Assembly (NCBI RefSeq): GCF_001194135.2
Contig: NC_068981.1
Location: 34,725,334 to 34,774,463, forward strand
DNA length: 49,130 nt
Origin: Octopus bimaculoides
Taxonomy: Eukaryota
Reading direction: 5' to 3'
The position numbers were made by a program, and so were the translations under genes. A model generated the notes under the pieces. It had not been told where the DNA came from. It worked only from the letters and a program-made list of their open reading frames with translations, and ran no database searches. This document shows, piece after piece, positions 2,936 through 3,103 of the stretch; within the stretch, counting starts at the first letter, position 1; each line of letters starts with the position of its first letter.

Positions 2936-2943
2936 TGACGTCA
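2936..2943. promoter_or_regulatory. Full palindromic CRE (TGACGTCA)
   Basis: Exact consensus about 510 bp upstream of the IER ATG. An extra half-site CGTCA lies at 2998-3002. Confidence 0.7.
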
Positions 2944-2959
2944 ACGGCACATGAACCGA

Positions 2960-3089
2960 CCAATCAAATAGCGGAAACGACTTTGTGGAATGTCAAACGT
3001 CACCAGCAAGCATCCAATGGGTGAAGCTTTCATAGCTATCACATGAGACGAGGCTTCAGTTCCCCATTCTATTTATAGTACCGGCCAAT
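2960..3089 (+). promoter_or_regulatory. Three CCAAT boxes (2960-2964, 3014-3018, 3085-3089)
   Basis: GACCAATCA, ATCCAATGG and GGCCAATCA, co-oriented and clustered within 130 bp. Two have the NF-Y-type RRCCAATCA context. Confidence 0.6.
3069..3078. promoter_or_regulatory. MEF2 site (CTATTTATAG)
   Basis: Exact match to CTA(A/T)4TAG inside the CRE/CCAAT cluster. Confidence 0.6.
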
Positions 3090-3092
3090 CAG

Positions 3093-3103
3093 CCAAATAA
3101 AGG
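3093..3103. promoter_or_regulatory. Imperfect CArG/SRF-like element (CCAAATAAAGG)
   Basis: CC-W7-GG, one W longer than the canonical CC-W6-GG, adjacent to a CCAAT box. Confidence 0.35.

What the first reader, a model, noticed from the sequence alone, without database searches (positions are those of the whole stretch)
2936..3103. Vertebrate-style activity-response module upstream of the IER gene: CRE + half-CRE + 3x CCAAT + MEF2 + CArG-like in 170 bp
Seen: TGACGTCA (2936), CCAAT (2960, 3014, 3085), CGTCA (2998), CTATTTATAG (3069) and CCAAATAAAGG (3093), in a CpG-retaining unique stretch in front of the only gene. Known: CREB, MEF2 and SRF sites together define the Arc SARE enhancer and other immediate-early-gene enhancers. 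Inference: a conserved or convergent stimulus-response element in an invertebrate with a complex brain, and possibly a usable activity-reporter promoter. This is the most functionally suggestive non-coding signal in the window.
Basis: partly seen in the sequence, partly recalled or inferred. Interest (0 to 1): 0.75.

Follow-up and report, generated by a model that had tools for sequence, protein, structure and literature searches.

The report
Ancient conserved promoter of octopus IER gene
The motif cluster is real: it is the promoter region of an octopus immediate-early-response (IER) gene, its sequence and motif order are also found in front of the same gene in oysters, clams, abalone, periwinkle and a sea slug, and it has never been tested for function.

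Summary
The window is Octopus bimaculoides chromosome DNA. The only clear gene is an intronless 762-aa IER-family ORF on the minus strand (137..2425), so the cluster lies 511-678 bp upstream of the ATG.

It is not a chance cluster. A profile built only from the upstream regions of IER genes in seven non-cephalopod molluscs finds one hit in the 49-kb window, 3149..2899 on the minus strand, E=5.5e-11. Motif order and spacing are conserved. They end in a TATA-like box, and 28-30 nt further on a CATT initiator-like motif, which puts the predicted start site near 2903.

The module is therefore a proximal promoter (about -25 to -245), not a distal enhancer like Arc SARE. The MEF2-type box fits the consensus. 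The CArG-like box has 7 A/T and is not a canonical SRF site. Chicken IER5 shares only two CCAAT boxes plus a TATA box.

Bivalves carry the module too, so it has no special link to complex brains. Inducibility, factor binding and the octopus start site are all untested. Verdict: a previously undescribed member of a known kind of promoter, with unusually deep conservation.

The parts
137..2425 (-). Intronless ORF for a 762-aa IER-family protein (IER2/IER5-like), the gene the module serves
   Evidence: ORF list. Pfam PF05760, E=2.6e-22. The identical protein is on O. bimaculoides chromosome CM046601.1. It has the conserved N-terminal domain and the C-terminal [14 protein letters not shown] / IALTV motifs shared with mollusc homologues.
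2899..3149 (-). Conserved promoter module as a whole: the stretch homologous to IER upstream regions of other molluscs
   Evidence: The nhmmer profile of 7 non-cephalopod molluscs gives one hit in the window, 3149..2899 minus strand, 35.6 bits, E=5.5e-11. No hit at E<=100 in 0.94 Mb of decoy DNA. Single copy. 98-100% identical among three Octopus species against about 90% further upstream.
2900..2905 (-). Initiator-like GCATTA; predicted transcription start at A 2903 (inferred, not measured)
   Evidence: (T/G)CATT(A/C) lies 28-30 nt downstream of the TATA-like box in 7 of 8 lineages. Leaders predicted from this point are almost free of ATG in the other molluscs.
2928..2933 (-). TATA-like box TTAAAC (about -30); TCAAAA, TTAAAA or TGAAAA in the other molluscs
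   Evidence: Conserved position 10-14 nt after CRE2 and 28-30 nt before the initiator-like motif.
2936..2943 (-). CRE2: full palindromic cAMP-response element TGACGTCA (-40..-33 from the predicted start)
   Evidence: The homologous site is TGACGTCA in Haliotis and Littorina, GGACGTCA in bivalve A, GCACGTCA in the oysters and Elysia, and lost in bivalve B.
2960..2964 (-). CCAAT2: inverted CCAAT box (GATTGGTCGG on the gene strand, GACCAATCA on + strand), NF-Y-type flanks, -61..-57
   Evidence: ATTGG is invariant in all 8 lineages, 21-23 nt before CRE2.
2998..3002 (-). CRE1: half CRE TGACG(TTT), -99..-95
   Evidence: The homologous site is TGACGTCA in bivalve A and Haliotis, TGACGTCG in Littorina and Elysia, ACGTCA in bivalve B, and absent in the oysters.
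3014..3018 (-). CCAAT1: inverted CCAAT box, -115..-111
   Evidence: An ATTGG occurs 54-62 nt after the AT box in 7 of the 8 lineages (not in Elysia).
3069..3078 (-). A/T box CTATAAATAG (CTATTTATAG on + strand): fits MEF2 consensus YTAWWWWTAR, -175..-166
   Evidence: The homologous box is CTATTTTTAG in bivalve A, Haliotis and Littorina, TTATTTTTAG in bivalve B, TTATAAATAG in Ostrea, ATATTTATAG in C. virginica and CTTTTTTTAG in Elysia. CTATTTTTAG is a Mef2 site shown to bind in Drosophila and Schistosoma (PMC3250504).
3085..3089 (-). CCAAT3: Octopus-specific extra CCAAT (GGCCAATCAG, perfect NF-Y-type flanks). It occupies the place of a GGTCA half-site conserved in all other molluscs
3093..3103 (-). 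CArG-like box CCTTTATTTGG (CC-W7-GG), the best-conserved block, -200..-190
   Evidence: The identical 11-mer is in Octopus, bivalve A, Haliotis and Littorina. There is 1 mismatch in the oysters and bivalve B, and 2 in Elysia. It is not a canonical CC(A/T)6GG.
3118..3125 (-). Conserved block ATGACAAC, within GCTACCATGACAAC (ATGACGAC in bivalves); factor unknown
3139..3145 (-). Conserved block GAATGAA (GTGAATGAAC in bivalves); factor unknown
3156..3162 (-). Degenerate remnant (TGACTAG) of an AP-1/TRE site that is TGAsTCA in bivalves, Haliotis and Littorina
2426..2903 (-). Predicted 5' leader (478 nt). It may contain an intron, or a second TATA box at 2624-2636
   Evidence: 8 upstream ATGs, all between +62 and +257. 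The last 222 nt have none. Conservation dips at 2875-2726. A related-species contig, L004, is collinear with the genome from 2701 to the ATG.

Best explanation
The cluster is the core of the proximal promoter of the octopus IER gene, an ancestral molluscan promoter kept at nucleotide level.

Read on the gene strand, the order is: degenerate AP-1 remnant, GAATGAA, ATGACAAC, CArG-like CCTTTATTTGG, an Octopus-only CCAAT, MEF2-type CTATAAATAG, CCAAT, half CRE, CCAAT, full CRE TGACGTCA, TATA-like TTAAAC, and an initiator-like CATTA near 2903.

Most likely mechanism (inferred): NF-Y on the CCAAT boxes keeps the promoter open. CREB/ATF-type bZIP factors on the CRE at about -40, next to the TATA-like box, and on the half CRE at about -97, deliver cAMP/Ca2+/kinase signals. 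A MADS-type factor (MEF2-like) on the A/T box, and an unidentified factor on the CArG-like box, add further signal input. Together these would give rapid stimulus-dependent transcription, as in vertebrate c-fos-, c-jun- or Nur77-type promoters.

Shown: the motifs, their conservation, order and spacing, and the homology. Inferred: the start site, which factors bind, and inducibility.
For: - Motifs are present and the cluster is unique in the window.
- The gene is a real IER family member on the minus strand.
- A profile from 7 other molluscs hits only 3149..2899, E=5.5e-11. Leave-one-out profiles find the module as the only significant hit in every locus, E=2.9e-7 to 6.3e-29. No decoy hits.
- Syntax is conserved: CCAAT2 to CRE2 21-23 nt, CRE2 to TATA-like 10-14 nt, TATA-like to CATT 28-30 nt, A/T box to CCAAT1 54-62 nt.
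- Leaders predicted from the CATT motif carry 3 ATGs against about 22 expected across the seven other loci, as real 5'UTRs do.
- Three about 1.65-kb contigs of bivalve B, probably transcripts, begin 103-151 nt before the ATG, around the predicted start at -126.
- Conservation among the three Octopus species peaks over 3175-2876.
- CTATTTTTAG is an experimentally bound Mef2 site in Drosophila and a flatworm.
- IER homologues change expression after injury in mussel and earthworm.
Against: - There is no RNA, CAGE or chromatin data for octopus, so the start site is only predicted.
- The octopus leader would be 478 nt with 8 upstream ATGs. This fits poorly unless there is an intron or a second, nearer start site.
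- Two of the three bivalve B contigs begin 9 and 25 nt upstream of the predicted +1, and whether they come from RNA is not established.
- The TATA-like box is non-consensus.
- CRE and CCAAT boxes also occur in constitutive promoters, so inducibility does not follow from sequence alone.
- The CArG-like box is not an SRF consensus.
- The A/T box departs from the MEF2 consensus in C. virginica and Elysia.
- No squid, cuttlefish or nautilus sequence could be obtained.
Confidence: 0.7

Rival explanations
1. A SARE-like activity-response enhancer: a CREB + MEF2 + SRF triad acting as a neuronal activity sensor, a specialisation linked to the cephalopod brain.
For: A full and a half CRE, a consensus MEF2-type box and a CArG-like box lie within 170 bp. 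SARE is defined as a cluster of SRF, MEF2 and CREB sites (PMC3561385).
Against: The module runs into a conserved TATA-like/initiator pair, so it is a promoter and not a distal element. The CArG-like box has 7 A/T and so is not a canonical SRF site. The same module is present in oysters, clams, abalone, periwinkle and a sea slug, so it is not a brain-related novelty.
Confidence: 0.12
2. The A/T box CTATAAATAG (3078-3069) is the true TATA box. Transcription would start near 3044 (TCA at the expected distance), and the CCAAT and CRE boxes downstream would lie in the 5'UTR.
For: On the gene strand the box reads TATAAATA, a perfect TATA box, and a TCA lies 33 nt downstream. Ostrea and C. virginica also have TATA-like versions, TTATAAATAG and ATATTTATAG.
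Against: In bivalve A, Haliotis and Littorina the box is CTATTTTTAG, a poor TATA on the gene strand but a perfect MEF2 site. A second TATA-like/initiator pair with fixed 28-30 nt spacing is conserved downstream. ATG depletion begins only after that pair. The probable transcripts of bivalve B start about 135-180 nt downstream of the A/T box.
Confidence: 0.1
3. A conserved but constitutive NF-Y/ATF-type promoter: the module drives steady expression and carries no particular stimulus response.
For: The CCAAT boxes are the most invariant elements, while individual CREs turn over between lineages: CRE1 is lost in the oysters and CRE2 in bivalve B. Chicken IER5 keeps only CCAAT-CCAAT-TATA.
Against: Every lineage retains at least one CRE. 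The family is defined by immediate-early induction in vertebrates (established knowledge). Mussel and earthworm homologues change strongly after injury.
Confidence: 0.15
4. A chance cluster of short motifs in A/T-rich non-coding DNA.
For: The motifs are short and were picked after the sequence was seen. Conservation among the three Octopus species alone is uninformative, because the whole 1.5 kb upstream is about 95% identical.
Against: Cross-class profile hit at E=5.5e-11. Order and spacing are conserved in 8 lineages. No decoy hits.
Confidence: 0.01

Closest known systems
Proximal promoters of vertebrate immediate-early genes (c-fos: SRE, CRE at about -60, TATA; c-jun: CCAAT, ATF/CRE-like site, MEF2 site; Nur77: MEF2 sites). 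Details are from my own knowledge.
   Same: Compact TATA-type promoter with a CRE immediately upstream of the TATA element, CCAAT boxes, and MADS-type A/T-rich boxes within about 250 bp. The gene belongs to an immediate-early family.
   Different: There is no sequence homology to any vertebrate promoter that I could test. The TATA element is non-consensus, the CArG-like box is CC-W7-GG, and there are extra conserved blocks (GAATGAA, ATGACrAC, GGTCA) with no assigned factor. Function is untested.
Arc SARE, the synaptic activity-responsive element (cluster of CREB, MEF2 and SRF sites; PMC3561385)
   Same: A CRE, a MEF2-type box and a CArG-like box occur together within less than 200 bp.
   Different: SARE is a distal enhancer, several kb upstream (my own knowledge). 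This module is the promoter itself, the SRF site is not canonical, and three CCAAT boxes are integral parts.
Chicken IER5 promoter (fetched here, L027)
   Same: Two inverted CCAAT boxes with ATTGGCCGG flanks about 45 bp apart (41-54 bp in molluscs), followed by a TATA box and an initiator.
   Different: No CRE, MEF2-type or CArG-like box, G+C-rich, and no significant profile similarity (E=1.4). The shared part is a generic promoter design, so homology is not shown.
Cephalopod conserved non-coding elements (Schmidbaur et al. 2022, PMC9023564)
   Same: Non-coding sequence conserved across lineages and associated with a gene.
   Different: Those elements were defined between squid and octopus at 95% identity or more over at least 100 bp, and only 1187 were found. 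This element is a motif-level but statistically alignable promoter shared across molluscan classes.

Membership tests
IER gene family (Pfam PF05760), for the gene served | Match to the IER profile above the curated cut-off, plus the conserved N-terminal domain and C-terminal motif | tested here: met
   80.9 bits against a cut-off of 22.6, E=2.6e-22. N-terminal and C-terminal motifs are shared with mollusc homologues.
Homologous molluscan IER promoter element (conserved non-coding element) | Statistically significant sequence similarity to the upstream regions of orthologues, detected without using the octopus sequence | tested here: met
   nhmmer, 7-species profile: one hit at 3149..2899, E=5.5e-11. 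Leave-one-out in all 8 lineages gives E=2.9e-7 to 6.3e-29. No hits at E<=100 in 0.94 Mb of decoys.
Homologous molluscan IER promoter element (conserved non-coding element) | Same order and spacing of blocks relative to the gene | tested here: met
   Block table and alignment.
Arc SARE-type enhancer | CRE (full or half) present in the cluster | tested here: met
   TGACGTCA at 2936 and CGTCA at 2998.
Arc SARE-type enhancer | MEF2 consensus YTA(A/T)4TAR in the cluster | tested here: met
   CTATTTATAG at 3069. This is a sequence match only; binding is untested.
Arc SARE-type enhancer | SRF CArG box CC(A/T)6GG in the cluster | tested here: not met
   CCAAATAAAGG has 7 A/T. There is no CC(A/T)6GG in 2900-3130.
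Arc SARE-type enhancer | Distal position, separate from the core promoter | tested here: not met
   The module is contiguous with a conserved TATA-like/initiator pair and spans about -25 to -245 from the predicted start. The start site itself is inferred.
Arc SARE-type enhancer | Induction by synaptic or neuronal activity | not testable with these tools
   No expression or reporter data were available.
CRE/TATA cAMP-responsive proximal promoter (c-fos type) | Full palindromic CRE within about 250 bp upstream of the start site | tested here: inconclusive
   TGACGTCA lies at -40..-33 from the start site predicted by conserved spacing, but the start site has not been measured.
CRE/TATA cAMP-responsive proximal promoter (c-fos type) | Consensus TATA box downstream of the CRE | tested here: inconclusive
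   Only a TATA-like element is present: TTAAAC in Octopus, TCAAAA, TTAAAA or TGAAAA elsewhere. It sits at a conserved 28-30 nt from the CATT motif.
CRE/TATA cAMP-responsive proximal promoter (c-fos type) | CREB occupancy and induction by forskolin or Ca2+ | not testable with these tools
   Needs an experiment.
NF-Y-type CCAAT promoter | CCAAT pentamer with RRCCAATSR-type flanks, within about 120 bp of the start site | tested here: met
   GACCAATCA at 2958 and GGCCAATCA at 3083 are two of only three such extended matches in the window. CCAAT2 is invariant in 8 of 8 lineages. Binding is untested.
SRF-dependent serum response element | CC(A/T)6GG CArG box | tested here: not met
   CC-W7-GG only. 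Each overlapping 10-mer matches 9 of 10 positions.

The most novel reading that the evidence does not exclude
The 250-bp module is an ancestral immediate-early promoter of molluscs, and perhaps of lophotrochozoans more widely. Its grammar (CArG-like, MEF2-type box, CCAAT, CRE, CCAAT, CRE, TATA-like, initiator) would have been held at nucleotide level for over 500 million years because it encodes a rapid signal-integrating switch. Being compact and shared across classes, it could serve as a portable activity or stress reporter promoter in octopus, cuttlefish, Aplysia and oysters.
Probability: 0.35. Interest if true: 0.75.

Novelty: new member of a known kind. Interest (0 to 1): 0.6.

Why it matters
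1. Non-coding DNA that can be aligned between cephalopods, gastropods and bivalves is rare. Even squid against octopus gave only 1187 candidate conserved elements (PMC9023564). A promoter kept across molluscan classes is a clean case for studying how regulatory grammar is maintained.

2. Cephalopod work lacks usable promoters. [quoted passage not shown] A short promoter defined by conservation, with clear candidate signal-response sites, is a concrete thing to test.

3. A 2025 preprint says immediate-early genes had not been reported in octopus before it, and it examined only creb and egr1. IER may be a further marker.

4. The result corrects the idea that the module reflects a complex brain, since clams have it too.

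Tried and rejected
- **Footprinting among O. bimaculoides, O. sinensis and O. vulgaris.** The species are too close: the 1.5 kb upstream is about 95% identical throughout. The three substitutions inside 2936-3103 miss all motifs, but my own estimate puts the chance of that at about 0.36.
- **Other cephalopod orthologues.** Neither the word-indexed search nor the exhaustive search of cluster representatives found an IER protein closer than bivalve or gastropod ones. The only exceptions are the 90% cluster members: O. sinensis, O. vulgaris and one Logan contig.
- **Finding the octopus start site from public assemblies.** The one Logan contig, L004 (93% identical, a related species), is collinear with the genome, ends in simple repeats on both sides, and cannot be shown to come from RNA. 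The Ostrea, C. virginica and Littorina contigs are genomic.
- **Pattern scans of metagenome contigs for more copies of the module.** The strict pattern gave 0 hits. The loose pattern stopped at 120 hits, none next to an IER gene or with a CRE or ATGACrAC block, so they are chance matches.
- **Vertebrate homology.** Chicken IER5 shows no significant profile match.
- **Structured RNA.** There is no Rfam match in the module. A sub-threshold mir-297 match lies in the (CA)n repeat and a snoR29 match has E=0.75; both are chance.
- **Repeat or transposon origin.** The module is single copy in the window and in the three Octopus loci.
- **Heat-shock elements** (relevant because vertebrate IER5 is an HSF1 target, from my own knowledge). 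None were found in the 1 kb upstream in octopus.

Full report
**1. What is in the window**

The window is Octopus bimaculoides chromosome CM046601.1 (assembly GCA_001194135.2), found by looking up the exact protein. It is A/T-rich and full of microsatellites, assembly gaps (5820 N) and interspersed repeats.

The only convincing gene is an uninterrupted ORF on the minus strand, 137..2425, of 762 aa. It matches the Pfam IER family PF05760 at 80.9 bits, E=2.6e-22. It carries both hallmarks of mollusc IER proteins:
- the N-terminal domain ([39 protein letters not shown]...);
- the C-terminal [14 protein letters not shown] and ...IALTV motifs.

Long low-complexity runs inflate it to more than twice the 260-400 aa seen elsewhere. 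Because the gene is on the minus strand, 'upstream' means coordinates above 2425, and the finding should be read as the reverse complement.

**2. The observation**

The cluster lies 511-678 bp upstream of the ATG.

- It is the only place in 49 kb with at least three of the four motif types, or with three CCAAT boxes, in 170 bp.
- In 20,000 dinucleotide-preserving shuffles of the module, each feature is individually rare (0.33%, 1.8%, 0.66%, 1.8%) and they never occur together.
- The motifs were chosen after the sequence was seen, so I do not treat these figures as the test of reality.
- 'CpG-retaining' is only mildly true: CpG observed/expected is 0.91-1.01 in the module against 0.82 for the window.
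- The CArG-like box has seven A/T between CC and GG, one too many for an SRF consensus.

**3. Close relatives do not help**

The protein's 90% cluster holds O. sinensis, O. vulgaris and one Logan contig, and all three loci could be fetched. The whole 1.5 kb upstream is about 95% identical in the three species, including a SINE-like repeat, so motif retention says little.

A sliding profile does show two peaks:
- 3175-2876 is 98-100% identical in all three species;
- 2700-2426 is 98-99% identical;
- between them identity dips to 94-95%, and further upstream it is about 90%.

**4. Distant relatives are decisive**

No other cephalopod IER protein exists in either protein collection. I therefore fetched the loci of mollusc homologues:
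- an unnamed bivalve-like contig from a JGI metagenome (L005);
- Ostrea edulis (L007);
- Crassostrea virginica (L013);
- a second unnamed bivalve (L149);
- Haliotis rubra (L012);
- Littorina saxatilis (L157);
- Elysia crispata (L159).

All of them carry the same series of blocks in the same order upstream of the ATG. On the gene strand the series is:

| Block | Sequence |
|---|---|
| AP-1 site | TGAsTCA |
| Unassigned | GAATGAA |
| Unassigned | GCTAC.ATGACrAC |
| CArG-like | CCTTTATTTGG |
| Half-site | GGTCA |
| A/T box | CTAwwwwTAG |
| CCAAT1 | ATTGG |
| CRE1 | TGACGTC(A) |
| CCAAT2 | ATTGG |
| CRE2 | (TGA)CGTCA |
| TATA-like | T-c/t/g-AAAA (TTAAAC in Octopus) |
| Initiator-like | (T/G)CATT(A/C) |

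The 11-mer CCTTTATTTGG is identical in Octopus, bivalve A (L005), Haliotis and Littorina. CTATTTTTAG is identical in bivalve A, Haliotis and Littorina.

Spacings are tight:

| Interval | Distance |
|---|---|
| A/T box to CCAAT1 | 54-62 nt |
| CCAAT2 to CRE2 | 21-23 nt |
| CRE2 to TATA-like box | 10-14 nt |
| TATA-like box to CATT motif | 28-30 nt |

**5. An unbiased test of homology**

I built an nhmmer profile from the seven non-cephalopod modules alone and searched the whole window on both strands. There is one hit, 3149..2899 on the minus strand, at 35.6 bits and E=5.5e-11.

- Leave-one-out profiles recover the module as the only significant hit in every locus, from E=2.9e-7 (Elysia) to 6.3e-29 (Haliotis). 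The two oysters were left out together.
- The reversed window plus 0.9 Mb of unrelated metagenome DNA gives no hit even at E<=100.
- The module is single copy and has no Rfam match.

**6. Where transcription probably starts**

The A/T box reads CTATAAATAG on the gene strand. It could be a TATA box, with a TCA 33 nt downstream near 3044. Three observations argue for a start further downstream, at the conserved CATT motif (A at 2903 in Octopus):

1. The TATA-like box and the CATT motif keep the classical spacing of about 30 nt in 7 of 8 lineages.
2. From CATT to the ATG, the other seven loci contain 3 ATG triplets against about 22 expected from composition, which is the signature of real leaders.
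3. Three independent contigs of about 1.65 kb from bivalve B share nearly the same ends and look like transcripts. They begin 103, 135 and 151 nt before the ATG, around the predicted start at -126.

This evidence is indirect. Two of those contigs begin 9 and 25 nt upstream of the predicted +1, and their RNA origin is not established.

Relative to +1 = 2903, the octopus boxes lie at:

| Box | Position |
|---|---|
| TATA-like | -30 |
| CRE2 | -40 |
| CCAAT2 | -61 |
| CRE1 | -99 |
| CCAAT1 | -115 |
| A/T box | -175 |
| Octopus-only CCAAT | -186 |
| CArG-like | -200 |
| ATGACAAC | -222 |
| GAATGAA | -242 |

**7. An unresolved point in Octopus**

The predicted leader is 478 nt, against 100-320 nt elsewhere, and holds 8 upstream ATGs. 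All of them lie between +62 and +257. The first 61 nt and the last 222 nt have none. Two readings fit:
- a leader intron, with donor CGCG|GTAAAC at 2882|2881 and an acceptor near TTTATAAAG|/AAAACAG| at about 2625/2618;
- a second, nearer TATA box (TATATTTATAAAG, 2636-2624), with a start near 2600.

The conservation dip at 2875-2726 fits an intron. The related-species contig L004 is collinear from 2701 to the ATG, but it may be genomic. Either way, the module stays within about 300 bp of the start site.

**8. Mechanism**

Shown: a deeply conserved promoter with a fixed grammar.

Inferred from established knowledge of these motif classes:
- The inverted CCAAT boxes have NF-Y-type flanks. GACCAATCA and GGCCAATCA are two of only three such extended matches in the window.
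- The palindromic CRE next to the TATA-like element, and the upstream half CRE, are the likely entry points for CREB/ATF signalling.
- CTAWWWWTAG is the MEF2 class. The exact 10-mer CTATTTTTAG is the Drosophila Actin57B Mef2 site and is bound by a flatworm Mef2 in gel shifts (PMC3250504).
- The factor for CCTTTATTTGG is unknown. It could be a weak or atypical MADS site, since each overlapping 10-mer is a 9/10 CArG, or something else.
- Individual CREs turn over: CRE1 is absent in the oysters and CRE2 in bivalve B. Every lineage keeps at least one.
- In Octopus the AP-1 site has decayed to TGACTAG, and the conserved GGTCA half-site is replaced by a third CCAAT box.

Inducibility is suggested by the family's behaviour in vertebrates (my own knowledge) and by strong expression changes of IER5-like genes in injured mussels and regenerating earthworms. 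It is not shown for octopus.

**9. Comparison with known systems**

The best analogy is the proximal promoter of vertebrate immediate-early genes such as c-fos, c-jun and Nur77, not the Arc SARE. SARE is a cluster of CREB, MEF2 and SRF sites (PMC3561385) that acts at a distance (my own knowledge). Here the SRF site is non-canonical and the module is the promoter itself.

The one vertebrate IER promoter I could retrieve, chicken IER5, has two ATTGGCCGG boxes 45 bp apart, then TATAAAGG and an initiator. It has no CRE, MEF2 or CArG site and no profile similarity. 'Vertebrate-style' is thus a statement about shared vocabulary, not demonstrated homology. Because bivalves share the module, it is not a correlate of complex brains.

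**10. Novelty and value**

I found no description of this element. A 2025 preprint on octopus immediate-early genes covers only creb and egr1 and does not mention IER. A 2026 preprint states that functional cephalopod promoters had not been identified, and that heterologous promoters and 4-kb upstream fragments failed. Squid-octopus conserved non-coding elements are scarce.

The element is a new member of a known kind of promoter. Its depth of conservation is unusual, and it is an obvious candidate for a compact reporter. Its function is wholly untested, which limits the score.

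Noticed in passing
window 2426-2903 (minus strand): The predicted 5' leader has 8 upstream ATGs, all between +62 and +257. Its first 61 nt and last 222 nt have none, whereas the leaders of the other molluscs are almost ATG-free. This suggests a leader intron (donor CGCG|GTAAAC at 2882|2881, acceptor near 2625/2618) or a second TATA box at 2624-2636.
   Followed up: partly
window 137-2425 (minus strand): The octopus IER protein is 762 aa against 260-400 aa in other molluscs. 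The excess consists of Q/H/T/N/S-rich low-complexity runs between the conserved N-terminal domain and the C-terminal motif. O. sinensis has 770 aa, and the O. vulgaris gene model (432 aa) looks truncated.
   Followed up: partly
window 3085-3089; L005, L007, L012, L013, L149, L157, L159 at the homologous position: A GGTCA half-site (nuclear-receptor-like) lies between the CArG-like box and the A/T box in all seven non-cephalopod molluscs. In Octopus a third CCAAT box takes its place.
   Followed up: partly
I could not assign a factor to either.
   Followed up: partly
window 3530-3770; copies at 45023-45238, 23755-23868, 24045-24204: A SINE-like interspersed repeat with a tRNA-like GAGTTCAAATCC segment, although ARAGORN calls no tRNA. 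It sits at the same place in all three Octopus species, about 400 bp upstream of the promoter module.
   Followed up: partly
window 16600-16850, 40513-40787, 41681-41964, 45418-45596, 13657-13881: A second interspersed repeat family with at least five diverged copies (72-84% identity). It produces spurious ORFs with similar translations.
   Followed up: partly
window 3171-3226: A sub-threshold Rfam match to mir-297 (35.7 bits against a gathering score of 90) falls in the (CA)n microsatellite next to the module. It is a low-complexity artefact.
   Followed up: yes
L027 2280-2400 (chicken IER5 upstream): The chicken IER5 core promoter has two inverted CCAAT boxes with the same ATTGGCCGG flank as the Octopus-specific CCAAT, 45 bp apart, followed by TATAAAGG and CTCAGTC. 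The resemblance to the mollusc CCAAT-CCAAT-TATA-initiator backbone may be deep homology or generic design.
   Followed up: partly
window 38077-38487 (minus strand) and 26024-26338 (+ strand): ORFs whose translations look like tails of retroelement proteins. They have no Pfam match, so this is unconfirmed.
   Followed up: partly
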